Shown here piece by piece: positions 604 to 22,544 of a stretch of 64,000 bases of DNA (positions are counted from its first letter, which is position 1; each line of letters opens with the position of its first letter). Location: the IMG/VR virus record IMGVR_UViG_3300032770_000002, positions 166,254-230,253 of that record; one strand, given 5' to 3'. Under the pieces are notes generated by a model. That model did not search any database, was not told the DNA's origin, and worked only from the letters and a program-made list of their open reading frames with translations. A program made the position numbers and the translations under genes.

Positions 604-882
604 GTGAACTACATCGTTTACGAAGAAGACGGTTTCGGAGTGGTGGAGTCACCTTGCGTTGAAGGGCGAAGTCTTGGCGTGTTTTCAGGGACGGAAGCTG
701 AGGTCGCGGCCTACTGTGAAGCTGAGACGCGTAAACTCCACCCGAAGCGAACGAACTGGGATTCACCGCAGATTCGTTTTAAGCCAGCGATTCAACTTAA
801 CCCAAATCACGTAGAATGGCAATCTTCATTAGTTTCGAAGGGGACGAGTGTGTCGGAAAGACCACACAAGCAAGCATCTTGA
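604..882 (+). CDS. hypothetical protein
   Basis: 92-aa ORF; GTTCTA element 6 nt before the GTG. Confidence 0.5.
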   Translation: MNYIVYEEDGFGVVESPCVEGRSLGVFSGTEAEVAAYCEAETRKLHPKRTNWDSPQIRFKPAIQLNPNHVEWQSSLVSKGTSVSERPHKQAS

Positions 883-1478
883 CGGCTCGGCTTAAGGCCT
901 CGCGCATCCCGGCCATCTTGGTCCGAGAACCTGGTGGGACGCCGTTTGGCGAAACATGCCGATCGATCCTAAAGGACCCAAACAACGACCTGTGCCCGGA
1001 AGCTGAGCTGCTCTTGATGAACGCTAGCCGCTCGCAACTTGTCAGCACAGTCATCTTGCCAGCTTTGAATGAAGGCGTTACCGTAATTGCCGATCGCTTT
1101 CATGACTCGACCATCGCCTATCAGGGTTACGGGCGTGAATTGGGACAGAAGGCCGAAGACGTTGTCAACGTCGCCATCGGTGACGTCATCCCAGACATTA
1201 CCTTTTACCTGTGGGCGGCCAAGGGCACGAAGGAACGCCGACAAATTCAGCGTGGAGCTCCGCCAACTGACAAGTTTGAGTCGCTAGACCAGGCCTTTTT
1301 TGCTAGGGTGCGTGAAGGCTACGAGCACATCATGACTCATAATGCGCGCGTTGCGTGCATCGAATCTAGCGGCGCCATTGACCAGGTTTCAGACGCAATT
1401 TGGAGCAAGCTACTCAGCTGGAAGGAGTGGTGCGTAAATCGGCCCAAAAAGCCCTGGGAGCCAAGTCTCAGCTTGTGA
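816..1478 (+). CDS. tmk: thymidylate (dNMP) kinase
   Basis: FISFEGDECVGKTTQ P-loop, REPGGT, ADRFHDSTIAYQG, PDITFYL motifs. Confidence 0.92.
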   Translation: MAIFISFEGDECVGKTTQASILTARLKASRIPAILVREPGGTPFGETCRSILKDPNNDLCPEAELLLMNASRSQLVSTVILPALNEGVTVIADRFHDSTIAYQGYGRELGQKAEDVVNVAIGDVIPDITFYLWAAKGTKERRQIQRGAPPTDKFESLDQAFFARVREGYEHIMTHNARVACIESSGAIDQVSDAIWSKLLSWKEWCVNRPKKPWEPSLSL

Positions 1479-1722: not shown

Positions 1723-1994
1723 AAGGCCTTGATTTCGATGACCGGAAGTTGTGAACCGTCCGCCATTACCGGACGGTTTCGTTTTGTCTCCTGAAGGTCA
1801 TCTTCGGTTATTGCCGAGTTCCAGCACTCGGAACACAAGAATCCATCGTAGCCGTAGATGGAGTGGAAGTCGGATGATTTAATGAGGAGGGTTTGGCAGT
1901 TGACGCACACCCCACACGTCACCATGTCACGGTGCCACCCGATTATTGAGTAGCCCGCGTTGTCAACCCCAAAGTCGTCTGATTTTGCGGACAT
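1719..1994 (-). CDS. small Cys-rich (Zn-ribbon-like) hypothetical protein
   Basis: CVNC...CSEC pairs; stop overlaps the convergent gene. Confidence 0.45.
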   Translation of the reverse strand: MSAKSDDFGVDNAGYSIIGWHRDMVTCGVCVNCQTLLIKSSDFHSIYGYDGFLCSECWNSAITEDDLQETKRNRPVMADGSQLPVIEIKAF

Positions 1995-2037
1995 TGGTTT
2001 CTTCTCGCGATTTAAGAACAGCAGTGTTCTCAGGTTC

Positions 2038-2643
2038 GTGCGTTATTTACCTGGACATCAATTTGAAAGTGGTTTGATTTTAGTAAGGAGATCTCGAACC
2101 GTTCATCGAGGAATTTTCAAGTGTGTTTGCGGTGATGAATTTGAAACATTTATAGCCAATGTCGCTAGGGGTATTACTCGATCATGTGGATGTCTTAAGT
2201 CAATACTTCGTCGACAAACACTGGGTCCAATCGATTACGAGTCTGCTCGTGATAAAATTCTCTTTTCTACGATCAAATTTCATGCCAAAGATCGAGGTCT
2301 TGAGTTTGAGTTAACTCTCGATGATGTCCGAAGATTAACGCGTCAAAACTGCCATTTCTGTGGGAGTCCTCCGGCCAGTCGTCATTTTATTGGAGGTCGA
2401 AATAGACTTGCGTCATTTTACATCATTCATAATGGGATTGACCGATTGGATAATCTAAAAGGTTACACTGTCAAAAACTCGGTGCCCTGCTGTAAACAGT
2501 GCAACTATTCAAAACGCGACAACAGTGTCGACGAATTTAACGCCTGGATTGATCGCGTTGTGGCCCATCGTAACGCGGTTAAAGATCAAAGTGAGATGGC
2601 TTCAACAGTGATTCTCAGACGAAATTGTCAGTTGACGTGTTAA
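2038..2643 (+). CDS. HNH homing-endonuclease-like protein
   Basis: CVCG...SCGC N-terminal motif; CHFCG...GIDRLDNLKGYTVKNSVPCCKQCNYSK HNH motif; lower GC than flanks; start placed at GTG 2038 (ORF track starts at 1960). Confidence 0.8.
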   Translation: MRYLPGHQFESGLILVRRSRTVHRGIFKCVCGDEFETFIANVARGITRSCGCLKSILRRQTLGPIDYESARDKILFSTIKFHAKDRGLEFELTLDDVRRLTRQNCHFCGSPPASRHFIGGRNRLASFYIIHNGIDRLDNLKGYTVKNSVPCCKQCNYSKRDNSVDEFNAWIDRVVAHRNAVKDQSEMASTVILRRNCQLTC

Positions 2644-3679
2644 GAATTTCGTGAATGAGAAGATTTTTTTCATTGTTCGCACATTGGTGGCAGCAGTCTC
2701 TGACCGGGTCTAAGCCGTCAAACCTTGCCTTGGCCTCGTCGCTGAACCACAGCTCGCTAAACTTTCGGTCCTTGATTGACCCGATTGCGCCAGTCTCATC
2801 ATAGGCCTTGTTGTGGCAAGCATAGACGTTTAAGTCCGCGCCAACGACCGGGACAATCTGCATGAAATAGCACCGGTGATAGGTTCGAAAGCTGTTGTGG
2901 GCCGATGACATCAAGTCATAGGTCGTGTTGACCGAGAACGTCTTGTCAACGATCTTGTCGCGAATCTGGTCGAGTTGAACCTGCACCCGTGCAGCGATCT
3001 TGCGGTGATACTCGTGGAAGCCGGGTGAAAGCCACATCGGGCTGAAGCGCACGTTCTGAACGCCGCAGTCCTTAAGCTGCTGTGAGAATTGGAATAGCTT
3101 GGAGCAGTTGTCGGCGTGGACGATGAAGTTGACGTAGAGGTCGCAGGTCTTTGACTTTCTTTTTGCAAAGGCCGCAATGTTGACCATGATCTCGTCGAAC
3201 ATCGACTCATGGACGTGGCGGAACTTTGCCAGCTCCTCCTTGCACGAGTAGTCCATTGACACGCGAACCCACTTGGCGTTGGCGAGAGTCTCTGCCCGCT
3301 CGTCACTCAGAAAGGACCCGTTGGTGATGATGGAGAGGTCGATGTTCCGCTCAAGCGTGTATCGCATCATCGGCACGATGTCTGGGTGGATGAGCGGCTC
3401 ACCGCCACCAGAGAACGTCAAGGCCTTGACCCCAATGTCGGAAAAGTCGTCGAGAAGCTCAATCATCTTCTCGAGCTTGATGCGGTCACGCACGGCCATC
3501 TCCTTGTGCATCTGGGACATCTCTGGCGCGTGATAGACACACCACCAACAGTGATGGTTGCAGAGATTGATTGGCTTGACCCGGACGTAAATAGGCGCAC
3601 TGATGGTGCCTTTTCTGAACGACTTGAGCTTGTCCGGGAAGTGAACTATCTTCAGGTCTGAATACTTGTTGCTCGGCAC
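2615..3679 (-). CDS. radical SAM protein with SPASM/twitch-like C-terminal domain
   Basis: CNHHCWWC (CxxxCxxC), SGGGEPL, ITNG, WVRVSMD; C-terminal CYF...VYACH...CCHQC. Confidence 0.9.
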   Translation of the reverse strand: MPSNKYSDLKIVHFPDKLKSFRKGTISAPIYVRVKPINLCNHHCWWCVYHAPEMSQMHKEMAVRDRIKLEKMIELLDDFSDIGVKALTFSGGGEPLIHPDIVPMMRYTLERNIDLSIITNGSFLSDERAETLANAKWVRVSMDYSCKEELAKFRHVHESMFDEIMVNIAAFAKRKSKTCDLYVNFIVHADNCSKLFQFSQQLKDCGVQNVRFSPMWLSPGFHEYHRKIAARVQVQLDQIRDKIVDKTFSVNTTYDLMSSAHNSFRTYHRCYFMQIVPVVGADLNVYACHNKAYDETGAIGSIKDRKFSELWFSDEAKARFDGLDPVRDCCHQCANNEKNLLIHEILNTSTDNFV

Positions 3680-3686
3680 GGTTAAA

Positions 3687-4160
3687 CTACGCTGGCACTT
3701 TCTTCAGGCTGATGAACCACGGTCGTTCATAGTCAATTGACTTCATGGCTCGAATGAGGCCGTCGACTGACGCCGGAAATTTGGCCTGGATGTTTCGGAA
3801 CATTCCAGTCATTGACAGTGCGTCAAGTTCGTTGTGGCTTGGGCCGTAGGTTGGGTAGTCCGCGTAGCCAACTAAGCCGACCGGCAGTTTTTGGAAGTCA
3901 ATGTCAAGCTTGACTTGCTCAAAGGCCCGCTCAAGCAGGAATGGCGTGATCGTGTAGACGATCGGACGCAGACCGGCGATGGCCATCCCGGCGGCAAATC
4001 CAACCATGCTCTGCTCGGCAATTCCAAACTCAATGTGCCTCCGCGGGCAGAGCGCGCGAAACGTGTCGAACATCGCTCCGCCGACGTCGCCAGTGATGAG
4101 GTGGACACGCCCGTCTTGCAGGCCTAACGCGGCAATGGATTCGGCAAACTGTTTTCTCAT
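3687..4160 (-). CDS. transketolase, pyrimidine-binding (C-terminal-type) subunit
   Basis: LITGDVG, FGIAEQSMVGFAAGMAIAGLRP, FLLERAFEQVKLD, GPSH. Confidence 0.88.
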   Translation of the reverse strand: MRKQFAESIAALGLQDGRVHLITGDVGGAMFDTFRALCPRRHIEFGIAEQSMVGFAAGMAIAGLRPIVYTITPFLLERAFEQVKLDIDFQKLPVGLVGYADYPTYGPSHNELDALSMTGMFRNIQAKFPASVDGLIRAMKSIDYERPWFISLKKVPA

Positions 4161-4792
4161 AGTTCGGACATGATCGATTGAAATTCAGGGTCGGTTAGGA
4201 AGTGAACGTGCCAGTCAGGGTGGGCTTCGAAAAGCTTGACACCGAAGCCCTTCTGGCGTCCGTATGTCTTGATTGGGAACACTTGGTTCATGAGCTTAGT
4301 GATTGACGGATCGAGACACCGGCACGAGCCCTGCCACCCGTTGTCGTCGACGTGAACGGTGAGATTATCGAGGTTGTATCGGCGGGCGACGTTCAAACTT
4401 TCCCACGTCGTTCCCTCAAGGCACTCGCCATCGCCAAGCAGGACGTGGACGTGGCCAGGGGCGTGGATAAACTTCTTGGCGTAGGCGATCCCGACGGCCG
4501 TTGGAAGGCCGTGTCCAAGGCTGCCTGTTGTTGACGGAATGCCATTGGCCGGGTCAATGTCAGGGTGGACCTTCATGACGTTAGGGTGAAAGCCGTGGCT
4601 CTCCAAGACCGCAAACCACGCGACACACGCGTGACCCTTGCTAAGGATGAAGACGTCATTCTTGTGGTCGAATTGCTTGTAGATGTCCACGATGACCGGA
4701 AGTGCGCTCAGGCTGCTGGCGATGTGGCCGTGTGAGTTGATGTCACGGTGGGACCTGGCTATTTCAATGACGCGGCGAATGAGTTCTTTCAT
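4157..4792 (-). CDS. transketolase, N-terminal TPP-binding subunit
   Basis: GHIASSLS, FILSKGHA, TTGSLGHGL, GDGECLEGTTWE...DDN TPP motif. Confidence 0.9.
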   Translation of the reverse strand: MKELIRRVIEIARSHRDINSHGHIASSLSALPVIVDIYKQFDHKNDVFILSKGHACVAWFAVLESHGFHPNVMKVHPDIDPANGIPSTTGSLGHGLPTAVGIAYAKKFIHAPGHVHVLLGDGECLEGTTWESLNVARRYNLDNLTVHVDDNGWQGSCRCLDPSITKLMNQVFPIKTYGRQKGFGVKLFEAHPDWHVHFLTDPEFQSIMSEL

Positions 4793-4794
4793 AC

Positions 4795-5466
4795 ATGTTT
4801 AGCAAAGAAGAAGTCATCTCGAGCTTGACCACTCCACGTCAAGCTCTGCTTAACCCGGCTCGGTGGAACCAATTCCTCTCGATGGGCCTGCCGATTAAGG
4901 ACAAGACGATTTTTGAGCCAGGCGCTGGCATCGGCGACCAGACTGATTGGCTGTTGAAGCAGGGCGTGAAACACGTCACGGTCCACGACGGCCGGCCGGA
5001 GTCGTTGAAGGTGATTCAAGACCGTTTCGGCTCTGACCCTCGGCTCAGTTACGTGTGCGGTAACTTGGAGAACGGCCTGACTGAAGCGCAGTTCAACTTC
5101 ACCGTTGACTTCATCTACTGCTATGGCGTCTACTATCATCTCAACGAGTCAATGCAGAATTGGAACATCATGAAAGGCCTCGCCAAGATGGGACCAACCA
5201 TGGCCTTTGACTACCTTGAAAGTCACCGTGGTGACGACTACACGTATTCATACGGGTATGAAGTTCCAAGCACGTCAATGAGCCGGTTTGCGCTGCGTCC
5301 GACTCGCGCGACTTTAATCAAGGCTGTCAGGGACATCTGGGGCTTTGCCTACTTGCCAAAGAACCAGCTTCAGTGGAATGACCCTTACGACGGGACGGAG
5401 CGGCGCTTTGTCATGGTCGCTTCTCATGTTCCATTGGACGGCGCTAACCTTGAGCTTCAGACCTGA
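4795..5466 (+). CDS. class I SAM-dependent methyltransferase
   Basis: IFEPGAGIGD motif I, VHDGR, DFIYCYGVYYHL. Confidence 0.8.
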   Translation: MFSKEEVISSLTTPRQALLNPARWNQFLSMGLPIKDKTIFEPGAGIGDQTDWLLKQGVKHVTVHDGRPESLKVIQDRFGSDPRLSYVCGNLENGLTEAQFNFTVDFIYCYGVYYHLNESMQNWNIMKGLAKMGPTMAFDYLESHRGDDYTYSYGYEVPSTSMSRFALRPTRATLIKAVRDIWGFAYLPKNQLQWNDPYDGTERRFVMVASHVPLDGANLELQT

Positions 5467-5839
5467 CAGAGTCTGTTAGGGCTTTAGACACCTTCTGGCG
5501 TAGAATCAACGTGAGCAGGTGTTGGGCCGCGTCGCCTAGTTCTGGGTCATTTTTAATGTTGTGGAGCCATGTTGTGCAAAGGGTCTTGGCCGTTTCAGGG
5601 CCAAACGAGTCAATAAATTCATTGTCTTTCAAAAAGAAGACAATGATACCCTGTGGCAGCTTTCCTTTCAAAACTCGATGAATAGCTTGGTATATGTGCA
5701 TCCGCCTTTGGGCGCCTTTAACGCGAATGACGAGAAGAGACCCTGGCTTTAATTCGCGGACGTCACCCACAAGCTCACACGAGATCAGGGTAGACAACCA
5801 CAAGCCAAAGACGCGTAGAAAGTAAAATTTTTTAATCAT
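5444..5839 (-). CDS. hypothetical protein
   Basis: ORF; ATG 5839 overlaps the upstream stop (ATGATTAA). Confidence 0.45.
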   Translation of the reverse strand: MIKKFYFLRVFGLWLSTLISCELVGDVRELKPGSLLVIRVKGAQRRMHIYQAIHRVLKGKLPQGIIVFFLKDNEFIDSFGPETAKTLCTTWLHNIKNDPELGDAAQHLLTLILRQKVSKALTDSVRSEAQG

Positions 5840-6596
5840 TGAGGTTGTTGAGTTCACGCTCGAGTTGATCGACGCCATTGACGAGAACCACGCGGTCGTC
5901 AAAGTTCACGAGGTCGTGGCTGTAGTTGACCCACCGCTTGACGTGTGGAAAAGCGAGCTCATTGAACGTGGCCAGGAATGGGGCGTTGGCCACGCCAACC
6001 ACGAACTTGCACCGCGACGCCAGTTCACCGATTTGGTTGAGTTTCAACCCGAGTTGAGTCGTCACGGGGATGCGGTCATCGCCGCAAGGGTGAGTGGCCA
6101 CAAGTTTAAACTTTCCAGCAAAGCGGCGAACCAGCTCGTCAACTAGGCCCTGTGAAAACCCATGGCACTGCCCGCTCAATGGCGTGGAGTTGACGAAGAG
6201 CATGTCAAATGACTGGCCGCTGAGAGGGTGATTCGGGTCCATTGACTCGGCTGGAAACAACATCTCCTTGTGGCTCGGCGTGGCCCACGAAAGCCCTAAC
6301 AACTTGGCGATGTAGCCGTGAAACTCAATGAGAAAGTCGAGGAACTTGCTCGGGTTGCGGCGCGTCTGATACCAGTTATCACGGCCTATCCACCCATCAA
6401 AAGACCCGTCGACGTGCTTGTCAGTAATGATTAGGTTTGGCAACTTTCTGGCCATTCCACGAACCTGGTCGACATACTCCGGACGCACTGAAAAGACGAA
6501 CTCGTCCGTAGTTCGTTTGGCCGCAATGTTGAGGAACATTAACATGAACAACTGGTCACCGCAATGAAATGACGAAAAGACGTTCTTTGTTGACAT
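5832..6596 (-). CDS. glycosyltransferase-like protein (GT-B/GT9-like)
   Basis: N-terminal HCGDQL; C-terminal LNQIGELASRCKFVVGVANAP resembles the heptosyltransferase-type motif. Confidence 0.5.
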   Translation of the reverse strand: MSTKNVFSSFHCGDQLFMLMFLNIAAKRTTDEFVFSVRPEYVDQVRGMARKLPNLIITDKHVDGSFDGWIGRDNWYQTRRNPSKFLDFLIEFHGYIAKLLGLSWATPSHKEMLFPAESMDPNHPLSGQSFDMLFVNSTPLSGQCHGFSQGLVDELVRRFAGKFKLVATHPCGDDRIPVTTQLGLKLNQIGELASRCKFVVGVANAPFLATFNELAFPHVKRWVNYSHDLVNFDDRVVLVNGVDQLERELNNLND

Positions 6597-7337
6597 ATGA
6601 TCGTGATGACTACTCTGTTCCGATTAACCGGAGAACTAGCGAGTGATCGATTGAAGGAATTTCGGTATTGCATCGAGAAAAATGCTGACAACCCGATTGT
6701 CGAAAAGCTTCACGTCCTGTGGGAGCGGAAAGATCCTATCAAGTCTCGCGATCCGAAGCTGAAGGTGCGGGAGCATTACTTCGGTGATCCATTCCCGTTC
6801 GATGACGACCATCTATTTTTGAATCATCCTAAGATCACCGTTCATATCTGTGATGGTCGGCCGATGTATAGCGACTTTATTCGTGTGGCCAGGGACGAGC
6901 ACCTTGAAGGAAAGGTCATTGCAATTTGCAACACAGACATTTGGACTGACGAGACCTTAGCCCTGGCCGAGAACATCCAGACTGACACGATTTACGCCAT
7001 CACGCGCCACAACTGGGACCCTGGAAAAAAGGAGTCCACTGGGTTGCAAGGTGACGGGCTGCACGGGTCACAGGACACGTGGATCTTTCGCCACCCGCTC
7101 AGGCCATTCCAGAATGAGATCTACATGGGCGTTCTTGGGTGTGATTCATATTTTGCCCAGAAAGCCATCGAGATGGGCATCACGGTCATCAACCCGTGCC
7201 GCCAGATCAAGACGTATCACCTGCACACGATCGGGTGGCGAAACAACACTCCAGGCGGAAAAAGCTACTGGGATTCACCCGATTACATGGCTGTCTGTAT
7301 TCAACCGAGTGACATTAATGCGCCGCCGGCGCCCTAA
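6597..7337 (+). CDS. glycosyltransferase-like protein (GT-A-like)
   Basis: ICNTDIWTDE (xxD motif), AITR, SQDTWIF, GVLGCDS, NPC...YHLH; pattern typical of viral GT-like proteins. Confidence 0.55.
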   Translation: MIVMTTLFRLTGELASDRLKEFRYCIEKNADNPIVEKLHVLWERKDPIKSRDPKLKVREHYFGDPFPFDDDHLFLNHPKITVHICDGRPMYSDFIRVARDEHLEGKVIAICNTDIWTDETLALAENIQTDTIYAITRHNWDPGKKESTGLQGDGLHGSQDTWIFRHPLRPFQNEIYMGVLGCDSYFAQKAIEMGITVINPCRQIKTYHLHTIGWRNNTPGGKSYWDSPDYMAVCIQPSDINAPPAP

Positions 7338-10668: not shown

Positions 10669-11171
10669 ACGCCCGCAATCTTATCGACCGGTTGGTTGAA
10701 ACGTCTGACTTGACGTTTGTCCCGATGGACGCTGACGAGATCCGGCAGGTTCAGTCTATTGCCGCTGGACAGCTGGCCAACGTGGACAATCTTTACTTCA
10801 TTAACCAGGACATTACTGATTATCACAGCCTTAACATCGACATCCCGCAGGAGTATTTGCGCAAGAAGGTTGGACACGGCCTTGAATCGGGTGACGTTCA
10901 CGGCGAGTTTTACGGATTCGGTCGAATGGCCTTCACACCTTCATCTCTTTTACGGTCTGAAATTGGAAGAGTTCCAGTTGTCTCTGGCTTGCACGTCATG
11001 GTGTTAAAGAGCAGCCAAGGGTGGGTTATTGGAACCACTCGCGGAGGGTCATACGGTGGCATAACTTTTTACAAGGACCACCCGATGCATGACCTCAACG
11101 CGGCCATCCAGAAGTTCATTGCCACGCTGGAAGTCATTGCAAATGGACAAAATTCCCGGTTTGACAGCTGA
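10665..11171 (+). CDS. hypothetical protein (N-terminus NARNLIDRLVE)
   Basis: TTG 10665 overlaps the upstream TGA; N-terminal motif shared with other putative head proteins. Confidence 0.6.
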   Translation: MNARNLIDRLVETSDLTFVPMDADEIRQVQSIAAGQLANVDNLYFINQDITDYHSLNIDIPQEYLRKKVGHGLESGDVHGEFYGFGRMAFTPSSLLRSEIGRVPVVSGLHVMVLKSSQGWVIGTTRGGSYGGITFYKDHPMHDLNAAIQKFIATLEVIANGQNSRFDS

Positions 11172-12126
11172 CGAACATGTCTAGCCGCTTGGCGTAGGGC
11201 GTCAGTCTATGGAAGTCGACCCACTCCAGAAAGTTGTCCAGGTCATTCTGGTCCAAGTTGGTCAGCCCGAGATAGTCAAGGAACGTGAACATCAGCCCGT
11301 CTGGGCGCGCAAGCTGAAGGCTGCGCATAAATTCACCCGTTGAAAATTCAAAGACGCGGCGCACGCGCTTCGTCACGGTTGTGATTTCGGGCTTTACGCC
11401 CAATGACGCCCACGTCAGCTCCTTTCCAGCACACGGCCCAGACGGCCCGCCAGTCCGTATCGGATATGTCCTAAAGACGCCATAGTAGCTCCAGTCAAGT
11501 CCACCAAGCCCATTGCGCTCAACTGCAACCCTCGGCAGCGTTGAGCGTGACGTGACGTGTGGAAAGAGCCCAAAATTCGTGTCGAGCAACAGGCCTTGTG
11601 AGCACTCAAAGATGGCCAAGTTGGAACTGATGTGCGAGATCAGGTTGAAGTAGGCCTCGTTGTCAACGACGACGATGTCCTGGTTGAGTGAGAAGAAGTC
11701 ATGTTCAATGACTGACTCAACACGGCGGTGGATAAACTTCCCTGCCCGGGCCATCCCTGTCCCTGACCCAGTTGACGAAATTCGCCTTACCAGGTCGGAT
11801 TCGTCGGCCTTCATCTCAGGCATTAAGACGGCCGCGTGCTCGTGGATGTAAATCGGCTTTTTGACGGCGCGCCAGTCTCGTTGAAGAAGTTCGAGTTCGA
11901 TGACTGAGTCTGGGCCCATCAAGATCGAGTCGGCCCAAAAGCTTGAAGCCGGGATGGAGCGCGTTGACCCTTGGGTGCTCGTGTGTCCGGAGTTCGGGCC
12001 GTTTTCACCAATGACGGTCAAGTGGAGTCCCGGGTATTCAGCCCTCAGTTTCTTGGCCAAAAATTCAGCCGCTGAGGCTTTTCCTTCACTGCCATATTGC
12101 CCGCCAAAGACAACGACGTGACGCAT
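11134..12126 (-). CDS. purZ: adenylosuccinate synthetase homologue, PurZ/PurZ0-like
   Basis: GGQYGSEGK (Ser where PurA has the catalytic Asp), PNSGHT, STGSGTG, ECSQGLLLD..FPHVTSRS, RTYPIRTGGPSGP, TTVTKRVRRV, TFLDY; 330 aa. Confidence 0.75.
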   Translation of the reverse strand: MRHVVVFGGQYGSEGKASAAEFLAKKLRAEYPGLHLTVIGENGPNSGHTSTQGSTRSIPASSFWADSILMGPDSVIELELLQRDWRAVKKPIYIHEHAAVLMPEMKADESDLVRRISSTGSGTGMARAGKFIHRRVESVIEHDFFSLNQDIVVVDNEAYFNLISHISSNLAIFECSQGLLLDTNFGLFPHVTSRSTLPRVAVERNGLGGLDWSYYGVFRTYPIRTGGPSGPCAGKELTWASLGVKPEITTVTKRVRRVFEFSTGEFMRSLQLARPDGLMFTFLDYLGLTNLDQNDLDNFLEWVDFHRLTPYAKRLDMFVSCQTGNFVHLQ

Positions 12127-15651: not shown

Positions 15652-16002
15652 ATGACAGAATTGTTGACAGGCCGATCACGGCGAGGTTCAGAACCTTGGC
15701 TAGGTGTCGACCTTGACGCTACTTTGGCCACCCACAAAGAGGGCTCTGGCATTGATTCCATCGGTGAGCCAGTGCCTGGCATGCTTGAGAAGGTTAAGCG
15801 CGCATTGCGGGCCGGACGCAAGGTGAAGGTCTTCACCGCGCGAGCGGGTGACCCTAGGCAAATTCCGCTCATTCAGCAGTGGACAGTCAAACATGGGCTT
15901 GGAAAGCTCGAAGTGACCAACGAAAAAGACGAGAACTGTGAAGAGATTTGGGACGACCGTGCCAAGAGCGTGGTTCCTAACAAAGGACGCTTTGCCAACT
16001 AG
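15652..16002 (+). CDS. HAD-superfamily phosphatase-like protein
   Basis: GVDLDATLA (DxDxT), VFTAR, K...WDDRA. Confidence 0.7.
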   Translation: MTELLTGRSRRGSEPWLGVDLDATLATHKEGSGIDSIGEPVPGMLEKVKRALRAGRKVKVFTARAGDPRQIPLIQQWTVKHGLGKLEVTNEKDENCEEIWDDRAKSVVPNKGRFAN

Positions 16003-16006
16003 ATTT

Positions 16007-17143
16007 ATGAGTGAAGAGAACCAACAGGTGCCGGAATTTGACGTTCTAACTCCAGACATTCCACTGCCGCAAGTCGTGGCGAGGCAGGAAATTGCGGATG
16101 AACGGAAGGGAGCGTTTCGATTCAGCTTTATCGGGTCTGGCCAGGGTGGCGGGAGAATTGCGGCGACATTCCGCGCCCTGGGCTACAAGCGCGTTTGCGC
16201 GATCAACACGGCGCGTCAGGACCTGGCGTCGCTCCCAGCCGACGTTAAGAAACTCGTTATCGGCGATGGAGAAGGAGGTGCTGGCAAAGACCCAGCCGTG
16301 GCGAAGGCAGCGTTTGATAAAAACGCTGAAAATGTCCTAGACCTGATGCGGGCGTCATTTGGCCAAGTGTATGACCGAACAATCATCTGTGTTGGGGCCG
16401 GCGGTGGAACTGGCGCTGGAACGGTGATCGGCCTTGTCGACAAAGCGCGTGAGCTTCAGGTTGCCAGCAAGTGTCCGACTGACAAGGTCGGCGTCATCGT
16501 TGCCCTGCCCAAGGTGACCGAAGGCCGGCGTCCAAGCATCAACGCTCACACCGTCTTGTTATCATTGGTCGCCTACGTTGAACAGGGCTTTGTCTCACCG
16601 CTTATCGTTCTTGACAACGAGCGAATGAGCTCACTCTATCCTGGGCTCGCGATCGATCCATTCTGGGACACGGCCAATCAAAGCGTCTGTCGGCTGTTTG
16701 ACCTCTTCAACATGATCTGCGTTCAAAATTCGACATACACCGCGTTCGACCCGGCTGATTACAAGTCGATCCTCGACTCAGGCCTGATCGTCTTTGGGGC
16801 CACGCCCGTCGCCAACTGGTCGGAGGCCGGCCAAATCAGCTCCGCACTGCGAGACAACTTGAAGAAAAACATTCTTGCAGGAGGTGTCAACCTGTCAACT
16901 GGAACGGTCGCCGCGGCAATCGTTATTGCTGGAAAGAGCGTCTTAAGCCAAGTGCCGCACGAGCACCTCGACCAGGCCTTCGATCAATTGACAAGGTTGT
17001 TGAAAACAAACAGCATGGTGCACCGTGGCATCTACAGCGGAAACAAGGACTCCATGGCCATTTACACCGCAATTGGCGGCCTGGCCGCACCGACTGAGAA
17101 GCTGGACGAGCTGGCCAAAATCGGCGGGATAAGCGGTAAATAA
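16007..17143 (+). CDS. tubulin/FtsZ-family GTPase (PhuZ/TubZ/CetZ-like)
   Basis: IGSGQGGGRIA, AINTA, GAGKDP, GAGGGTGAG signature, LDNE, FDPADY (T7 loop); start ATG 16007. Confidence 0.9.
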   Translation: MSEENQQVPEFDVLTPDIPLPQVVARQEIADERKGAFRFSFIGSGQGGGRIAATFRALGYKRVCAINTARQDLASLPADVKKLVIGDGEGGAGKDPAVAKAAFDKNAENVLDLMRASFGQVYDRTIICVGAGGGTGAGTVIGLVDKARELQVASKCPTDKVGVIVALPKVTEGRRPSINAHTVLLSLVAYVEQGFVSPLIVLDNERMSSLYPGLAIDPFWDTANQSVCRLFDLFNMICVQNSTYTAFDPADYKSILDSGLIVFGATPVANWSEAGQISSALRDNLKKNILAGGVNLSTGTVAAAIVIAGKSVLSQVPHEHLDQAFDQLTRLLKTNSMVHRGIYSGNKDSMAIYTAIGGLAAPTEKLDELAKIGGISGK

Positions 17144-18321: not shown

Positions 18322-21135
18322 ATGAATGAGCCAATGCCAACACTGAATGAGCGCGTTGAGATCTTAGATGACCTACCAAAACCGATAATTGACGACGCTT
18401 CTGCTGCACCTGAACCAGCTCGCCTGACGCGAGTCTTTTCAAAGTCAGGAATTTGCCCATTTGACGACGTCACGTGGATCAAGCGAGACGTCGACATCAC
18501 CGATGACAAGGGTAAGGTCGTCTTCACGCAGAAGGGCGTCGAGACTCCAGAATTTTGGTCCGACCTGGCTGTCAAGATCGTCGCTTCGAAGTATTTTTGG
18601 GGCGAAAAGAACACCGACCAGCGTGAACACTCCGTGCGCCAGTTGATTCATCGCGTGTGTGACACCATTGCGACGTGGGCCGTTGAAGGACGATACGTTC
18701 ACCCTGACGACGAGACGCTCTTCTACAACGAACTTTGCTGGCTTTGCCTGCATCAACACGCGTCTTTTAATTCGCCCGTTTGGTTTAACGTTGGGCTGTT
18801 CCACCAATATGAAGCCGGGCGCGGCAGTGAAGGCGGGTGGGCTTGGGACCAAGACCTCGGCGAAGCTGTGAGGGTCAGGACGATGTATGAGAAGCCACAG
18901 TGCTCGGCTTGCTTCATCGTGTCCGTCGCTGACAACATGGAGGCACTCCTTGACTTGGCCAAGACTGAGGCGATGCTCTTCAAGTTTGGAAGCGGAACTG
19001 GGACGGACCTGACGCCCATTCGTTCATTTCGTGAGAAACTCTCCGGCGGTGGGTCGCCGTCAGGCCCGATGAGTTTTTTGCGCGTCTACGACCAGGTTGC
19101 TGGCATCGTCAAGTCAGGCGGCCGAACTCGTCGTGCGGCGAAGATGAACACCATCCGTGACTGGCACCCTGACATCGAGGAGTTCATTAACGCGAAGCCA
19201 GTTGAGGAACGAAAAGCGCGGGCCCTAATCGAGTCAGGCTATGATGGCTCCATTAACGGTGACGCCTACTCGAGCGTGATGTATCAGAATGAGAACCTTT
19301 CTGTTCGAGTCAGCGACCAGTTCATGAAGGCAGCCACGAATGGCGATGGAACGTGGTGGACAAAAGCGGTCACGAGTGGAGACCGGGTTGAGAAGAAAGA
19401 CGCCAAGGACTTGCTGCACAAGATGGCCGAAGCAGCTTGGTTCTGTGGTGACCCAGGCGTGCAGTTTGACGGCGTCATCCAGCGTTACCACACGTGTGCT
19501 GGAACGGAGCCGATTCACAGCACAAACCCATGTGCTGAATATGTCTTCATCAACAACACGTCGTGCAACCTCGCCTCAATTAACCTCGTCAAGTTCATGG
19601 AAGGCGAGGTGTTCAACGTCGAGCGGTTCAAAGCCGCGGTGCGGCTCATCTTTACGGCCCAAGAGATCTTGTTTGACAACTCGAGCTATCCAACCAAGAC
19701 GATTGCCGAGAACTCGCACATCTTCAGGACTGTAGGGCTTGGCTTTGCGAACCTTGGCTCGCTGTTGATGGGCCTTGGCATTCCATATAACTCTGACCAA
19801 GGCCGTAGCATTGCCGCTTCGATTACGGCCATCATGACGGGTGAAGCTTACGCCACGTCGGCTGGAATGGCCAAGACGCTGGGACCGTTTCCGGGGTTCT
19901 ATGACGCGCGCTGTTCGCACGTCAAGCACCCGGTCAAGGCGAACAATGTTGAGTCGATGCGCGACGTCTTAAACCTCCACGCCGCACACGCGAGCAAGCT
20001 CAAGACTCCAGGGCACCGCTATCTCGATGCCGCCGCAAACGAGTGTTGGCTGCGGGCGATTGGACTGTTCAACTGCCACGGTGTGCGCAACGCCCAGGCA
20101 ACGGTCATTGCGCCAACTGGAACGATCGCATTCATGATGGACTGCGACACGACCGGGATAGAGCCAGAGCTTAGCTTGGTCAAGGTTAAGTCGCTCATCG
20201 GTGGCGGGTCCTTGACGATCGTCAATCGCTCCATCGGTCGGGTGCTTCGCCAGCTCGGCTACAGTGAGCCTGAAATTGATGCCGCGATCAAACACGTGGA
20301 GAAATATGGCCACCTTGAGGCCATCAGCGAGGACATCAAGTCGCCGCTCAGGATTGACGACCACCACGACGTCTTTGACACGTCACTGCCGGCCGGGCCG
20401 AGCAAGCGCTCCATCCCATACATGGCCCACGTCCAGATGATGGCTGCAGTTCAGCCGTTCATCTCTGGGGCGATTTCAAAGACGATCAACATGCCAGAAA
20501 GCTCCACGGTCGAAGACGTGAAGCAGGCTTACGTGGAAGCGTGGAAGTCTGGTCTGAAGTGTGTGGCCATCTACCGTGATGGCTCTAAACGAGCCCAGCC
20601 ATTAAACGTCAAAAAGTTTGGTCAAGACAAAGCAGCGGACCCGGCGTTAAATGGCCACGGTGTTTATCTCCCAAATCGACACCGGCTCCCTGACACCCGG
20701 AAGGCCGTGACGCACAAGTTCAGCGTTGGTGGCCATGAGGGTTACCTGACTGTCGGCCTCTTTGAAAACGACATGCCAGGTGAGCTGTTCATCACGATGG
20801 CCAAGGAGGGTTCGACGGTAGGCGGCCTGATGGACACGATTGGCACGCTGACAAGTTTGGCGCTGCAGTATGGCGTGCCACTCGAAGCTTTAATCCGCAA
20901 GTTTCGGTCAACTCACTTCGAGCCATCTGGCATTACGACAAATCCAAAAATCCGGATGTCGGCCTCGATCATCGACTACATATTCCACTGGATGGCCCTT
21001 GAATTTGACCACGATGACGAAGTTTCCAGCGTCAGTGACGAGGTAAAGACGTGCCCACATTGCGGCCACGTGGCGCAGCGTAGTGGGACGTGTTACACTT
21101 GCACGAATTGCGGAAGCAGTCTCGGTTGCAGTTGA
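18322..21135 (+). CDS. nrdJ: class II (B12-dependent) ribonucleotide reductase
   Basis: FNSPVWFN, QCSACF, GGRTRRAAKM, TNPCAE, CNLASINL, IAPTGTI, ISGAISKTIN; TSCPD domain and C-terminal Zn ribbon. Confidence 0.95.
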   Translation: MNEPMPTLNERVEILDDLPKPIIDDASAAPEPARLTRVFSKSGICPFDDVTWIKRDVDITDDKGKVVFTQKGVETPEFWSDLAVKIVASKYFWGEKNTDQREHSVRQLIHRVCDTIATWAVEGRYVHPDDETLFYNELCWLCLHQHASFNSPVWFNVGLFHQYEAGRGSEGGWAWDQDLGEAVRVRTMYEKPQCSACFIVSVADNMEALLDLAKTEAMLFKFGSGTGTDLTPIRSFREKLSGGGSPSGPMSFLRVYDQVAGIVKSGGRTRRAAKMNTIRDWHPDIEEFINAKPVEERKARALIESGYDGSINGDAYSSVMYQNENLSVRVSDQFMKAATNGDGTWWTKAVTSGDRVEKKDAKDLLHKMAEAAWFCGDPGVQFDGVIQRYHTCAGTEPIHSTNPCAEYVFINNTSCNLASINLVKFMEGEVFNVERFKAAVRLIFTAQEILFDNSSYPTKTIAENSHIFRTVGLGFANLGSLLMGLGIPYNSDQGRSIAASITAIMTGEAYATSAGMAKTLGPFPGFYDARCSHVKHPVKANNVESMRDVLNLHAAHASKLKTPGHRYLDAAANECWLRAIGLFNCHGVRNAQATVIAPTGTIAFMMDCDTTGIEPELSLVKVKSLIGGGSLTIVNRSIGRVLRQLGYSEPEIDAAIKHVEKYGHLEAISEDIKSPLRIDDHHDVFDTSLPAGPSKRSIPYMAHVQMMAAVQPFISGAISKTINMPESSTVEDVKQAYVEAWKSGLKCVAIYRDGSKRAQPLNVKKFGQDKAADPALNGHGVYLPNRHRLPDTRKAVTHKFSVGGHEGYLTVGLFENDMPGELFITMAKEGSTVGGLMDTIGTLTSLALQYGVPLEALIRKFRSTHFEPSGITTNPKIRMSASIIDYIFHWMALEFDHDDEVSSVSDEVKTCPHCGHVAQRSGTCYTCTNCGSSLGCS

Positions 21136-21487: not shown

Positions 21488-21772
21488 GTGAAGACGCTCA
21501 ATTTGCAAGTCGGTGCGATGTGCGGCATGCCAAGCCAGACGTGCCTCATGTCCAAGAAAAATCGTGAAGCTCTTCAACTTGACGTCAACGGCCTGGTCGT
21601 TGTGCGGTCCAATGACCAAGACACCTCGGTGGTTCGACGCATCCTTAAGGCTCCAAACATCCCGCAAAAGGACGCCTTCGTGTTCTTGTCACCTGACGAC
21701 CTAAACTTGCTCAATGTCAACATTGCAGACAACGTCGAGCTCAGCCAAGACACCGAGGGAGTGGAGACTTAG
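21488..21772 (+). CDS. hypothetical protein
   Basis: ORF, start reassigned to the GTG after the promoter. Confidence 0.55.
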   Translation: MKTLNLQVGAMCGMPSQTCLMSKKNREALQLDVNGLVVVRSNDQDTSVVRRILKAPNIPQKDAFVFLSPDDLNLLNVNIADNVELSQDTEGVET

Positions 21773-22544
21773 CGACTTTCTTTTAAACGAAACCGAAGTG
21801 GCCTATCTGACGTGTTTGGCTAACGTCATGGACAATGGAAAACCGACCGGTCCAAGGGGCCAGCAAACGCGTGAAGTCTTAAACGCGTCATTCAAAATCA
21901 GGCACCCATCTTCAGCCCCAATTCGAACGTGTGACCTAGAACGGAACAAGGTCATTGCGGAGTATACCCACAAGGAGATGGAGCTTTATCTTAGCGGTTC
22001 GAATAGCGTCAGTGACTTTGCAAAGGCAAGCCAATTCTGGAAGAAAATTGCCAACCCAGATGGGACCATCAATTCGGCCTACGGTTATTTGATTTGGCAC
22101 GAGAAAAGCTGTGGTGACCCAACAATGGAGGTCCCACATTTTGAACCAGGACGGATGAATGGAAGTTTGGCCATGCGGACTCCGTGGGAGTGGGCCCGCA
22201 ATTCCATGCTTCAAGATAAGGACACCAGACAAGCATTCCTTCGGTTTAGCCTGCCACGTCACCAGTGGGTCGGCAACCGCGACCAAGTCTGCACGATGCA
22301 CGGTCACTTTGTCATCCGCGACGACAAGCTGAACTTCTCCATCGTGATGCGGTCAAATGATTGTTTTAAGGGCCTCGTCTATGACCTTCCGTTTTTCATT
22401 AAGCTCATGGAATTGATGGCCGACGAGCTGAAGCCGACTTATCCAAATCTCCAAGTTGGCGAGTATTTTCACCTCGCCCACAGTCTCCACATCTACGAGT
22501 CAGACATCCCAAAGATCTTGAAGATGCTAGGCAGTTCTGCTTAG
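21714..22544 (+). CDS. thymidylate synthase homologue, probable dCMP (hydroxy)methylase type
   Basis: NSAYG, DTRQA, DQVCT (catalytic Cys), MRSNDCFKGLVYD (Asp at the E. coli ThyA N177 position), HSLHIYE; start uncertain. Confidence 0.8.
   Translation: MSTLQTTSSSAKTPREWRLSDFLLNETEVAYLTCLANVMDNGKPTGPRGQQTREVLNASFKIRHPSSAPIRTCDLERNKVIAEYTHKEMELYLSGSNSVSDFAKASQFWKKIANPDGTINSAYGYLIWHEKSCGDPTMEVPHFEPGRMNGSLAMRTPWEWARNSMLQDKDTRQAFLRFSLPRHQWVGNRDQVCTMHGHFVIRDDKLNFSIVMRSNDCFKGLVYDLPFFIKLMELMADELKPTYPNLQVGEYFHLAHSLHIYESDIPKILKMLGSSA

What the first reader, a model, noticed from the sequence alone, without database searches (positions are those of the whole stretch)
2615..7337. Sugar-tailoring cluster: radical SAM + split transketolase + methyltransferase + two GT-like genes
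Seen: seven tightly packed genes. The transketolase is split into 211-aa and 157-aa subunits and lacks the usual last domain. Established: split transketolase-like pairs, radical SAM/SPASM proteins and methyltransferases occur in bacterial surface-polysaccharide loci, and TPP enzymes can add two-carbon branches to NDP-keto sugars. Inference: the phage builds an unusual branched or methylated sugar for virion glycosylation, host surface remodelling, or hypermodification of the modified cytosine, rather than for pentose-phosphate metabolism.
Basis: partly seen in the sequence, partly recalled or inferred. Interest (0 to 1): 0.75.

Follow-up and report, generated by a model that had tools for sequence, protein, structure and literature searches.

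The report
Phage sugar-tailoring and glycosyl-transfer cassette
A jumbo phage carries a compact gene cassette, shared with hundreds of other phages, bacteria and small archaea, that most likely rebuilds a nucleotide-activated sugar (probably a heptose) and attaches it to a target; neither the sugar nor the target is known.

Summary
Window 2615-7337 encodes a radical SAM/SPASM enzyme, a two-subunit mini transketolase-like TPP enzyme (211 aa and 157 aa, no C-terminal domain), a SAM methyltransferase and two proteins that model as glycosyltransferases, one GT-B nearest family GT9 and one GT-A. The seventh ORF (5444-5902) is doubtful.

The core is a mobile four-gene cassette: GT9-like transferase, TPP subunit, TPP subunit, radical SAM. 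The radical SAM enzyme is highly conserved and was found on 184 viral contigs and in 398 species genomes. It almost always sits beside a mini TPP enzyme, which is PDH-E1-like in most phages and transketolase-like here.

More distant bacterial versions lie inside full NDP-heptose pathways (GmhA, GmhB, HldE-like). The phage also encodes an HldE-domain-II-like nucleotidyltransferase elsewhere in its genome.

Best reading: the cassette tailors an NDP-heptose-type sugar. A radical step creates a carbonyl, the TPP enzyme adds two carbons, a methylation follows, and the sugar is transferred, most likely to a virion protein. A pentose-phosphate role is unlikely.

DNA hypermodification is a live rival for this phage. 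It is not the cassette's general role, because complete small phages that carry it have no thymidylate-synthase homologue.

No published description was found.

The parts
2615..3679 (-). Radical SAM enzyme with a C-terminal Fe-S (SPASM/twitch-type) domain, 354 aa, GTG start. It is the most conserved gene of the cassette.
   Evidence: Pfam Radical_SAM 8e-16 and SPASM just above cut-off. Invariant C40/C44/C47 plus C270, C288, C329, C333 across 23 homologues. More than 1000 homologues at E<1e-10, with 53-83% identity to phage and proteobacterial copies. Nearest solved relatives by sequence are the sugar-acting enzymes BlsE, BtrN and, weakly, DesII.
3687..4160 (-). Pyrimidine-binding (Pyr) subunit of a mini transketolase-like TPP enzyme, 157 aa, with no Transketolase_C domain.
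   Evidence: Pfam Transket_pyr 2e-18. It keeps the N-terminal Arg (MRK), the GIAEQ glutamate and the GPSH histidine. It ends where long split transketolases continue. Identity is 64-74% to the subunits in L177 and L178.
4157..4792 (-). Diphosphate-binding (PP) subunit of the mini transketolase-like TPP enzyme, 211 aa. Its stop overlaps the Pyr start by 4 nt.
   Evidence: Pfam Transketolase_N 1.5e-14. Best PDB hit is the split-transketolase N chain 6yak (7e-24). The GH, SKGHA, HP and GDGE...N motifs and a C-terminal WH are aligned. More than 7000 homologues of about 205-235 aa. NCBIfam transketolase score is 86.5 against a cut-off of 488.
4795..5466 (+). Class I SAM-dependent methyltransferase, 223 aa, divergent from the PP gene across a 2-nt gap.
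   Evidence: Methyltransf_11 (28.1 bits, cut-off 21.2) and Methyltransf_25 (28.1, cut-off 27). Glycine-rich EPGAGIGD motif. Coding score 0.235 against -0.054 for the antisense ORF. An 85%-identical homologue lies in the same divergent position in L178.
5444..5902 (-). Doubtful ORF (152 aa, or 131 aa from an internal start). More likely a convergent spacer between the methyltransferase and the GT9-like gene.
   Evidence: Coding score 0.062, about 1.7 SD below the genome mean. No family hit. Atlas model pLDDT 0.49 and no relatives. Promoter-like and terminator-like matches lie inside it, at chance frequency.
5832..6596 (-). Compact GT-B glycosyltransferase nearest family GT9 (heptosyltransferases), 254 aa. 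It is the fourth member of the conserved cassette.
   Evidence: AF2 model pLDDT 91.3. Top Foldseek hits are WaaC, a GT9 protein (3tov), TibC and WaaF. VIA-align gives Z about 14 for all GT9 entries against about 10 for the next GT-B groups. Homologues lie next to the radical SAM gene in 38 loci, with 51% identity in L177. G13-D14 is invariant. No Pfam GT9 hit for any of 20 members.
6597..7337 (+). GT-A-fold glycosyltransferase, 246 aa, start codon back to back with the GT9-like gene.
   Evidence: AF2 model pLDDT 89.3. Foldseek probability 1.0 to GalNAc-T2, chondroitin synthases, WrtF and RmlT and to Swiss-Prot GT2-type enzymes. 2448 representative homologues. N112-x-D114, D160, H208 and H210 are invariant. 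Homologues occur in L001, L006 and L175 beside the cassette.

Best explanation
The region is a glycan-building cassette.

Its conserved core is four genes: a GT9-like transferase, the two subunits of a minimal TPP enzyme, and a radical SAM enzyme. This phage adds a SAM methyltransferase and a GT-A transferase.

Proposed mechanism:
1. The substrate is a nucleotide-activated sugar, most likely an NDP-heptose. It is either drawn from the host ADP-heptose pathway or activated by the phage's own HldE-domain-II-like nucleotidyltransferase, which is encoded at a second locus.
2. The radical SAM enzyme abstracts a hydrogen from the sugar and oxidises or dehydrates it to a carbonyl.
3. The TPP enzyme adds a two-carbon unit to that carbonyl. 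The unit would be a glycolaldehyde-type unit for the transketolase-like form here, and a hydroxyethyl or acetyl unit for the PDH-E1-like form in most relatives.
4. The methyltransferase methylates the product.
5. The two transferases attach it to an acceptor, most probably a virion protein.

Shown: gene identities, folds, the conservation and linkage of the cassette, and the heptose-pathway context of its relatives.

Inferred: the substrate, the order of steps, the chemistry of the radical SAM and TPP steps, and the acceptor.
For: (1) Linkage of radical SAM and TPP genes.
- In 63 of 79 viral loci both TPP subunits lie within 3 kb of the radical SAM orthologue.
- In 52 of 79 cellular loci at least one does.
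- The same quartet is contiguous and co-directional in L177, at 51-70% identity.

(2) The TPP partner is interchangeable. It is PDH-E1-alpha-like in most phages and proteobacteria. It is transketolase-like here, in L153, L175-L178 and in DPANN archaea. This argues for a shared C2-carbanion function rather than sedoheptulose-7-phosphate synthesis.

(3) Sugar context.
- L001 has C-methyltransferases and GT25, GT2 and Fringe-like genes.
- L041, L040 and L031 have GmhA, GmhB, HldE-like, SDR, DegT, cupin and methyltransferase genes.
- L170 has SIS, RmlA-, RmlB- and RmlC-like genes and a C-methyltransferase.

(4) Three independent pointers to heptose.
- The transferase is GT9-like.
- Relatives carry full heptose pathways.
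- The phage has a 148-aa protein matching rfaE_dom_II at 8.8e-39. It lies beside a paralogous radical SAM gene and a GT47-like transferase.

(5) The nearest solved relatives of the radical SAM enzyme act on sugars or cyclitols: BlsE, BtrN and DesII.

(6) Evidence on the acceptor.
- The cassette lies between terminase and portal in L177.
- It lies right after a P22-like coat gene in group B phages.
- It lies near flagellins in three bacterial loci.

(7) 0 of 10 complete 30-40-kb phages that carry the cassette have a thymidylate-synthase-family gene.
Against: - No member of the radical SAM family or of the mini TPP pairs has been characterised, so the chemistry is inferred by analogy.
- The phage lacks GmhA, a heptose kinase and GmhB. 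Its nucleotidyltransferase scores below the NCBIfam cut-off (132.6 against 181.5).
- GT9 assignment rests on fold only. No Pfam GT9 hit was found in 20 members.
- 27 of 79 cellular loci show no TPP gene within 3 kb. One transketolase-type pair (L176) occurs with a zinc alcohol dehydrogenase and no radical SAM gene.
- In this phage and its jumbo relatives the cluster lies among nucleotide-metabolism and replication genes, namely dTMP kinase, a PurZ-like gene and DnaB. It does not lie among structural genes.
- Flagellin proximity is rare: 3 loci.
Confidence: 0.55

Rival explanations
1. DNA hypermodification. The tailored sugar is transferred by the GT-B and/or GT-A enzyme onto a hydroxymethyl- or hydroxy-pyrimidine in the phage DNA, to block host nucleases.
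For: - The genome has two divergent thymidylate-synthase homologues besides a canonical ThyA, one of them at window 21714-22544.
- A dTMP-kinase-like gene sits next to the cluster, and this adjacency is kept in the closest relative. That resembles the kinase/GT/TS-homologue clusters of RB69, DLP3 and RL38J1 (PMC13326640).
- Phage gene clusters with a cytidylyltransferase-like enzyme and a GT-B transferase make heptosyl-5hmC (bioRxiv 10.1101/2023.12.21.572611).
- In jumbo relatives the cluster lies beside DnaB and PolA.
Against: - 0 of 10 complete small phages carrying the cassette have a thymidylate-synthase-family gene.
- 0 of 11 complete (≥90%) genomes, the window's own among them, have a Tet_JBP gene. 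That search had no positive control.
- The same cassette occurs in bacterial flagellar and polysaccharide loci and in DPANN archaea.
- In other phages the cassette sits in the head or packaging modules.
- The divergent TS homologue here is 14 kb away, next to an amidoligase. That suggests a non-sugar modification.
- The best fold matches are GT9 enzymes, not T4 beta-GT.
Confidence: 0.2
2. Auxiliary transketolase. The split pair is an ordinary transketolase that raises sedoheptulose-7-phosphate supply for heptose synthesis. The radical SAM enzyme acts independently.
For: - Sedoheptulose-7-P is the first substrate of the GmhA/HldE/GmhB pathway present in the bacterial clusters.
- The PP subunit keeps the transketolase-type histidines and the TPP motif. 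The Pyr subunit keeps the catalytic Glu and the N-terminal Arg.
- The best PDB hit is a functional split transketolase.
Against: - Orthologous radical SAM genes pair with PDH-E1-alpha-like mini enzymes in most loci, and those cannot make sedoheptulose-7-P.
- The pair stays glued to the radical SAM gene and the GT9-like gene in minimal cassettes that have no heptose genes.
- The Pyr-domain stretch that reads THAG...GEDG.SH in the functional split and human transketolases is not conserved, either here or in the cluster-linked long transketolases.
- Scores lie far below the transketolase equivalog cut-offs.
- The C-terminal domain and parts of the PP domain are missing.
Confidence: 0.1
3. Host-envelope remodelling. 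The tailored sugar is added to the infected cell's LPS core or another surface glycan, for example to block superinfection, rather than to the virion.
For: - GT9 enzymes canonically act on the LPS inner core (WaaC and WaaF are the top fold matches).
- Bacterial homologues lie in polysaccharide-type clusters.
- In this phage the cluster is not in a structural module.
Against: - No membrane-associated or lipid-carrier genes (flippase, polymerase, undecaprenyl-phosphate transferase) were seen in the phage loci examined.
- TibC, a protein heptosyltransferase, matches about as well as WaaC.
- The cassette sits in the head module in L177 and in group B phages.
Confidence: 0.15

Closest known systems
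TPP-dependent two-carbon branching of NDP-keto sugars. Examples: AviB1/AviB2 (PDH-E1 alpha/beta-like) in avilamycin eurekanate, the paulomycose enzymes, and YerE in yersiniose (cited in PMC4753412).
   Same: A two-subunit TPP enzyme (PP plus Pyr) is encoded inside a sugar-nucleotide tailoring cluster with methyltransferases and GTs. Most relatives of this cassette carry a PDH-E1-alpha-like PP subunit.
   Different: - The subunits here are far smaller (211 and 157 aa).
- They are transketolase-lineage in this phage.
- They lack the C-terminal domain.
- They are coupled to a radical SAM enzyme rather than to an SDR 4,6-dehydratase.
- No activity has been tested.
- YerE belongs to a different TPP family (acetolactate-synthase type; from my own knowledge).
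Split-chain transketolase (Carboxydothermus hydrogenoformans, PDB 6yak/6yaj).
   Same: It is the best sequence match for the PP subunit, 7e-24. For the Pyr subunit it matches at 1.2e-11, on a par with the top-ranked DXP synthases (9e-12 to 1.1e-11). The PP-then-Pyr order on two chains is the same, as are the TPP motif, the catalytic Glu and the transketolase-type histidines.
   Different: - The subunits are 211 against 309 aa and 157 against 341 aa.
- There is no Transketolase_C domain.
- The Pyr-domain substrate stretch is not conserved.
- The genomic context is glycan tailoring, not central metabolism.
Radical SAM enzymes acting on sugars and cyclitols: BlsE (cytosylglucuronate decarboxylase), BtrN (dehydrogenase) and DesII.
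   Same: These are the nearest solved relatives by sequence. They share a radical SAM core plus a C-terminal auxiliary Fe-S domain. They are also encoded in sugar-tailoring clusters.
   Different: Similarity covers only the core (E 1e-13 with a profile). The family here is a distinct, tightly conserved clade with its own invariant residues and an obligate-looking TPP partner. Its reaction is unknown.
GT9 heptosyltransferases: WaaC and WaaF (LPS core) and TibC (protein O-heptosylation).
   Same: The fold matches over the whole 254-aa model at Z about 14. There is an N-terminal Gly-Asp motif. Relatives sit in heptose-pathway contexts.
   Different: The protein is about 70-130 aa shorter. No Pfam GT9 match was found in 20 family members. 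Donor and acceptor are untested.
Phage virion glycosylation (mycobacteriophage capsid and tail-tube glycans; Freeman et al. 2023, as cited in PMC12619734) and phage DNA glycan hypermodification (bioRxiv 10.1101/2023.12.21.572611).
   Same: Phage-encoded GTs are combined with sugar-activating or sugar-tailoring genes. In relatives the cassette lies beside capsid, portal or terminase genes. Heptose is a known phage DNA adduct.
   Different: In the text searched, the DNA paper does not mention a radical SAM or transketolase component. The virion-glycosylation paper itself was not read. The target here is undetermined.

Membership tests
Transketolase (EC 2.2.1.1) | PP domain with the TPP-binding GDG...N motif and transketolase-type active-site histidines | tested here: met
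   The GH, SKGHA, HP, GDGE...DDN and C-terminal WH motifs align to 6yak and human transketolase. Residue roles are from my own knowledge.
Transketolase (EC 2.2.1.1) | Pyr domain with the cofactor-activating glutamate | tested here: met
   The GIAEQ motif is conserved in the 157-aa subunit and in all aligned homologues.
Transketolase (EC 2.2.1.1) | C-terminal (Transketolase_C) domain | tested here: not met
   There is no Pfam hit. The protein ends where long split C subunits continue.
Transketolase (EC 2.2.1.1) | Pyr-domain sugar-phosphate-binding stretch (His...Asp-Gly-x-Ser/Thr-His, as in 6yaj and human transketolase) | tested here: not met
   The window has a shortened GYAD-YPTYGPSH stretch. 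The upstream His and the Asp are absent, as they are in cluster-linked long transketolases. The roles of these residues are recalled from memory.
Transketolase (EC 2.2.1.1) | Score above the NCBIfam equivalog cut-off | tested here: not met
   86.5 bits against 488 for the PP subunit and 52.2 against 488 for the Pyr subunit.
Radical SAM superfamily with SPASM/twitch domain | CxxxCxxC cluster motif and a Pfam score above cut-off | tested here: met
   C40, C44 and C47 are invariant. Radical_SAM scores 59 bits against a cut-off of 29.5.
Radical SAM superfamily with SPASM/twitch domain | Auxiliary Fe-S cluster cysteines (seven for a full SPASM domain, three or four for a twitch domain) | tested here: inconclusive
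   SPASM scores 23.5 bits against a cut-off of 21.5. Only four C-terminal Cys are invariant (C270, C288, C329, C333). That fits one auxiliary cluster, but the metal content cannot be tested here.
Glycosyltransferase family 9 (heptosyltransferases) | GT-B fold closest to GT9 structures | tested here: met
   The top Foldseek hits are all GT9 enzymes. VIA-align gives Z 13-14 for GT9 against about 10 for other GT-B groups.
Glycosyltransferase family 9 (heptosyltransferases) | Match to the sequence model PF01075 | tested here: not met
   No hit for the window protein or for any of 20 family members at E<=0.1.
Glycosyltransferase family 9 (heptosyltransferases) | Use of ADP-heptose as donor | not testable with these tools
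   Support is circumstantial only: heptose pathway genes in related loci and an HldE-domain-II-like gene in the phage.
GT-A glycosyltransferases (GT2-like) | GT-A Rossmann-like fold with an acidic metal and nucleotide motif | tested here: met
   Foldseek probability is 1.0 to many GT-A enzymes. An invariant N112-x-D114 stands in place of DxD, with D160, H208 and H210 also invariant. No Pfam hit.
Class I SAM-dependent methyltransferase | Pfam score above cut-off and the glycine-rich SAM motif | tested here: met
   Methyltransf_11 scores 28.1 (cut-off 21.2) and Methyltransf_25 28.1 (cut-off 27). The EPGAGIGD motif is present.
NDP-heptose biosynthesis pathway (GmhA, HldE/HldA kinase, GmhB, HldE/HldC nucleotidyltransferase) | All four activities encoded | tested here: not met
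   Only a nucleotidyltransferase-like gene is present, outside the window (132.6 bits against a cut-off of 181.5). tblastn with the bacterial GmhA, kinase and GmhB proteins finds nothing in the 230-kb genome.
Phage DNA glycosylation systems | Co-occurrence of the GT cassette with an enzyme that makes a hydroxylated pyrimidine (TS homologue or TET/JBP) | tested here: inconclusive
   Met in this genome, which has two divergent TS homologues. Not met in 10 of 10 complete small phages carrying the cassette. The Tet_JBP search was negative but had no positive control.

The most novel reading that the evidence does not exclude
The radical SAM enzyme and the mini TPP enzyme form a previously undescribed two-enzyme system. 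It would build a new higher-carbon or C2-branched heptose derivative from an NDP-heptose. Phages, freshwater proteobacteria and DPANN archaea would display this sugar on virions, flagella or S-layers. In this phage it might instead go on hypermodified DNA bases.
Probability: 0.3. Interest if true: 0.8.

Novelty: new variant of a known kind. Interest (0 to 1): 0.62.

Why it matters
Sugar-nucleotide tailoring clusters are well known. This particular core is not: a tightly conserved radical SAM enzyme bound to a stripped-down two-subunit TPP enzyme, usually with a compact GT9-like transferase.

The core is on at least 184 viral contigs and in 398 species genomes across bacteria and DPANN archaea. 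I found no paper describing it.

If the proposed chemistry holds, it defines a new oxygen-independent route to a C2-modified heptose. It would also define a new class of phage glycan. Such a glycan would bear on phage-host recognition, on immune or defence evasion, and on the interpretation of 'transketolase' auxiliary genes in viromes.

The cassette is small enough (about 3 kb in L177) to reconstitute directly.

Tried and rejected
- Megablast of the region against phage records found nothing.
- tblastn of the methyltransferase against phage records found nothing.
- A single-protein scan of genome contigs found nothing. The alignment-based scan worked.
- 'relatives' mode is not available for virus records.
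- PHROGs gave only generic radical SAM hits. NCBIfam gave no above-cut-off family for any cluster gene.
- Literature searches on radical SAM with transketolase, heptose, flagellin, glycosylation island, split transketolase and ADP-heptose found no relevant description.
- General association with flagellin is rejected. Only 3 loci have a flagellin within 8-10 kb.
- The antisense ORF 4789-5139 is rejected.
- ORF 5444-5902 is doubted.
- My first single-linkage clustering merged unrelated proteins into the 'TPP' cluster. I replaced it with HMM-based assignment.
- Pfam scanning of the 20-member GT9-like alignment gave no GT family.
- The promoter and terminator scan was at chance level.
- The rare case of the transketolase-type pair with a zinc alcohol dehydrogenase and no radical SAM gene (L176) is a single observation. 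I did not build on it.

Full report
**Setting**

The window is the last 64 kb of a complete 230,253-bp virus record with direct terminal repeats and 54% GC. It has no close relative among deposited phage genomes.

**The observation**

Domain assignments come:

| Coordinates | Strand | Length | Assignment |
|---|---|---|---|
| 2615-3679 | - | 354 aa | Radical SAM enzyme with a C-terminal SPASM-type domain |
| 3687-4160 | - | 157 aa | Transketolase pyrimidine-binding (Pyr) domain protein |
| 4157-4792 | - | 211 aa | Transketolase diphosphate-binding (PP) domain protein |
| 4795-5466 | + | 223 aa | Class I SAM methyltransferase |

The three minus-strand genes form a translationally coupled unit. 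The PP and Pyr genes overlap by 4 nt, and a 7-nt gap separates Pyr from the radical SAM gene.

The methyltransferase lies on the other strand, 2 nt from the PP start. A codon-usage score trained on the genome's long ORFs supports this call: 0.235 against -0.054 for the antisense ORF, with a genome mean of 0.20 and SD of 0.08. The closest relative, L178, keeps an 85%-identical methyltransferase in the same divergent position.

ORF 5444-5902 is weak. Its coding score is 0.062, it has no relatives, and its model is poor. I treat it as doubtful.

The two remaining ORFs, 5832-6596(-) and 6597-7337(+), start back to back. They have no sequence-family hit.

**The two unknown ORFs are glycosyltransferases by fold**

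The 254-aa protein:
- With a 20-sequence alignment it models at pLDDT 91.
- All top Foldseek matches are GT9 heptosyltransferases: WaaC, a Veillonella GT9 protein, the protein heptosyltransferase TibC, and WaaF.
- VIA-align places these at Z 13-14. The next GT-B groups reach about Z 10.
- No Pfam GT9 match exists for any of the 20 family members. The assignment is therefore at fold level only.

The 246-aa protein:
- It belongs to a family with 2448 representative members.
- It models at pLDDT 89 as a GT-A fold.
- It has an invariant N-x-D in place of the usual DxD motif.

The ESM Atlas gave the same two leads independently.

**The transketolase-like pair**

The PP subunit:
- It is closest to the N chain of a functional split transketolase (6yak, 7e-24).
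- It keeps the TPP motif and the transketolase-type histidines.

The Pyr subunit:
- It keeps the N-terminal arginine, the catalytic glutamate and the GPSH histidine.
- It stops exactly where ordinary split C subunits go on into the Transketolase_C domain.
- The stretch that reads THAG...GEDG.SH in functional transketolases is shortened and not conserved.

Scores are far below the transketolase equivalog cut-offs.

This mini format is a family trait, not a truncation:
- More than 7000 homologues of about 205-235 aa exist.
- DPANN archaeal loci carry pairs of 245-258 aa plus 158-184 aa.

**A conserved, mobile cassette**

Distribution of the radical SAM enzyme:
- It has more than 1000 homologues at E<1e-10.
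- Identity is 53-83% to phage and proteobacterial copies and about 40% to copies in Lachnospiraceae, Rhodospirillales, Planctomycetes, Omnitrophota and DPANN archaea.
- Alignment-based scans found it in 398 species genomes and on 184 IMG/VR contigs.

Linkage, from HMM-based assignment:
- Both TPP subunits lie within 3 kb of the radical SAM orthologue in 63 of 79 viral loci.
- At least one lies within 3 kb in 52 of 79 cellular loci.

The TPP partner comes in two lineages:
- Most phages and proteobacteria have a PDH-E1-alpha-like PP subunit of about 205 aa with a Pyr subunit of about 171 aa.
- This window, L153, L175-L178 and the archaea have the transketolase-like pair.

A GT partner is nearly always present. 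It is either the GT9-like protein (38 loci) or an Anp1/GT62-like GT-A protein (46 loci).

The best match to the window is L177, a 20-kb phage contig. There the GT9-like, PP, Pyr and radical SAM genes are contiguous and co-directional, at 51%, 70%, 64% and 67% identity. They lie between the terminase and portal genes.

In the window the methyltransferase and a spacer have been inserted between the GT9-like gene and the PP gene. An HNH endonuclease of foreign composition (GC3 0.36) sits between the radical SAM gene and the dTMP kinase gene. It is absent from L178.

**What the neighbours say**

- In the 735-kb phage LR756501, the trio lies among two NDP-hexose C-methyltransferases and GT25, GT2 and Fringe-like genes.
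- In Lachnospiraceae and other bacteria, the orthologue and a paralogous radical SAM gene lie with GmhA, GmhB, an HldE-like kinase/nucleotidyltransferase, a 4,6-dehydratase-type SDR, a DegT aminotransferase, a cupin, several methyltransferases and a long split transketolase.
- In a Methylococcaceae locus, the four-gene cassette is flanked by SIS, RmlA-, RmlB- and RmlC-like genes and a C-methyltransferase.
- In Polynucleobacter and one other bacterium, it lies within a few kb of flagellin genes. This is rare overall: 3 loci.
- In group B phages, it follows a P22-like coat gene and a GT2 gene.
- In group A phages, it follows YqaJ, RecT and RusA genes.
- In jumbo relatives of this phage, it lies between DnaB and a baseplate gene, with up to four methyltransferases.

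**Heptose**

Three independent lines point to an NDP-heptose:
- The GT9-like fold.
- The full heptose pathway in the more distant bacterial clusters.
- A second locus in this same genome, outside the window.

The second locus is at G000:C1 about 114,034-116,592 (L088). It encodes:
- a 148-aa protein matching HldE domain II (heptose-1-phosphate adenylyltransferase) at 8.8e-39, below the curated cut-off;
- a 129-aa unknown;
- a second radical SAM/SPASM enzyme most like the paralogue of the bacterial clusters;
- a GT47-like transferase.

The phage has no GmhA, heptose kinase or GmhB. It would depend on the host for the early steps.

**Mechanism**

The radical SAM enzyme's nearest solved relatives act on sugars or cyclitols: BlsE, BtrN and DesII. 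It has four invariant C-terminal cysteines, which fits one auxiliary cluster.

The minimal cassettes lack an SDR dehydratase. I therefore infer that the radical SAM enzyme creates the carbonyl and the TPP enzyme attacks it with a two-carbon carbanion. This parallels the PDH-E1-like and YerE-type branching enzymes. Methylation and transfer would follow.

A PDH-E1-like enzyme and a transketolase-like enzyme can each partner orthologous radical SAM enzymes. That argues for a common C2-transfer role and against sedoheptulose-7-phosphate supply.

One transketolase-type pair (L176) occurs with a zinc alcohol dehydrogenase instead of a radical SAM gene. This is compatible with an oxidation step, but it is a single case.

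None of this chemistry is shown.

**Acceptor**

Head-module placement in L177 and in group B phages, together with the flagellar loci, favours protein.

The DNA rival is serious for this phage:
- The genome has two divergent thymidylate-synthase homologues, an amidoligase, a PurZ-like gene and a dTMP kinase next to the cluster.
- Heptosyl-5hmC made by a cytidylyltransferase plus a GT-B transferase is documented.
- Kinase/GT/TS-homologue clusters make glycosylated 5-hydroxycytosine.

Against it:
- Ten of ten complete 30-40-kb phages carrying the cassette lack any thymidylate-synthase-family gene.
- None of eleven complete genomes searched, the window's own among them, has a Tet_JBP match, though that search had no positive control.

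DNA therefore cannot be the cassette's general target.

**Verdict**

It is refined to a widespread, uncharacterised cassette of radical SAM enzyme, mini TPP enzyme and GT, probably acting on a heptose. The chemistry and the acceptor remain inferences.

Noticed in passing
L088:6035-8593 (G000:C1 about 114,034-116,592, outside the window): A second sugar locus in the same genome. It holds an HldE-domain-II-like nucleotidyltransferase (148 aa), a 129-aa unknown, a second radical SAM/SPASM enzyme (323 aa) and a GT47/RXYLT1-like transferase (248 aa). A DUF1565 beta-helix protein and a NADAR protein follow on the other strand.
   Followed up: partly
window 11134-12126 (-): A 330-aa adenylosuccinate-synthetase homologue. 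Its best solved relatives are phage PurZ enzymes: phiVC8 6fm1 at 1.5e-23 and S-2L 7odx at 8e-18. This suggests 2-aminoadenine (Z) in the DNA.
   Followed up: partly
window 21714-22544 (+) and 23281-24531 (+): A divergent thymidylate-synthase homologue (54.6 bits), with an Amidoligase_2 protein about 0.7 kb downstream (one 169-aa ORF between them) and a class II ribonucleotide reductase upstream (18322-21135). The genome has three TS-family genes in all. This is a possible pyrimidine hypermodification system, separate from the sugar cluster.
   Followed up: partly
window 1960-2643 (+): An HNH/endonuclease VII-like gene with foreign composition (GC3 0.36, coding score -0.098). It overlaps the 3' end of the radical SAM gene by 29 nt. 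It is absent from the closest relative L178, where dTMP kinase directly neighbours the cassette. It is probably a homing-endonuclease insertion.
   Followed up: partly
window 4790-4797 and 6594-6599: Two pairs of divergent genes have start codons 2 nt and 0 nt apart (CAT-AC-ATG and CATATG). Promoters and ribosome-binding sites must therefore lie inside the neighbour's coding sequence, or translation is leaderless. The first arrangement is conserved in L178.
   Followed up: no
window 15938-17143 (+): A tubulin/TubZ-like protein (401 aa; Tubulin and TubZ-like_C domains), as in jumbo phages that position their replication compartment with PhuZ-type filaments.
   Followed up: no
window 63374-63940 (-) and G000:C1:2-1807: A homologue of the 787-aa baseplate-J-like protein of L006 matches both ends of the contig. 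The gene therefore spans the record's ends, which fits the direct terminal repeats reported for the record.
   Followed up: no
L176:8001-10651: A transketolase-type mini PP/Pyr pair (51% and 47% identity to the window's) occurs with an FkbM-type methyltransferase and a zinc alcohol dehydrogenase. No radical SAM gene lies within 8 kb. This may be an oxygen-tolerant variant of the same step.
   Followed up: no
window 816-1478 (+): A thymidylate-kinase-family gene directly neighbours the cassette, both here and in L178 (54% identity). Nucleotide kinases sit beside GTs in known DNA-glycosylation clusters.
   Followed up: partly
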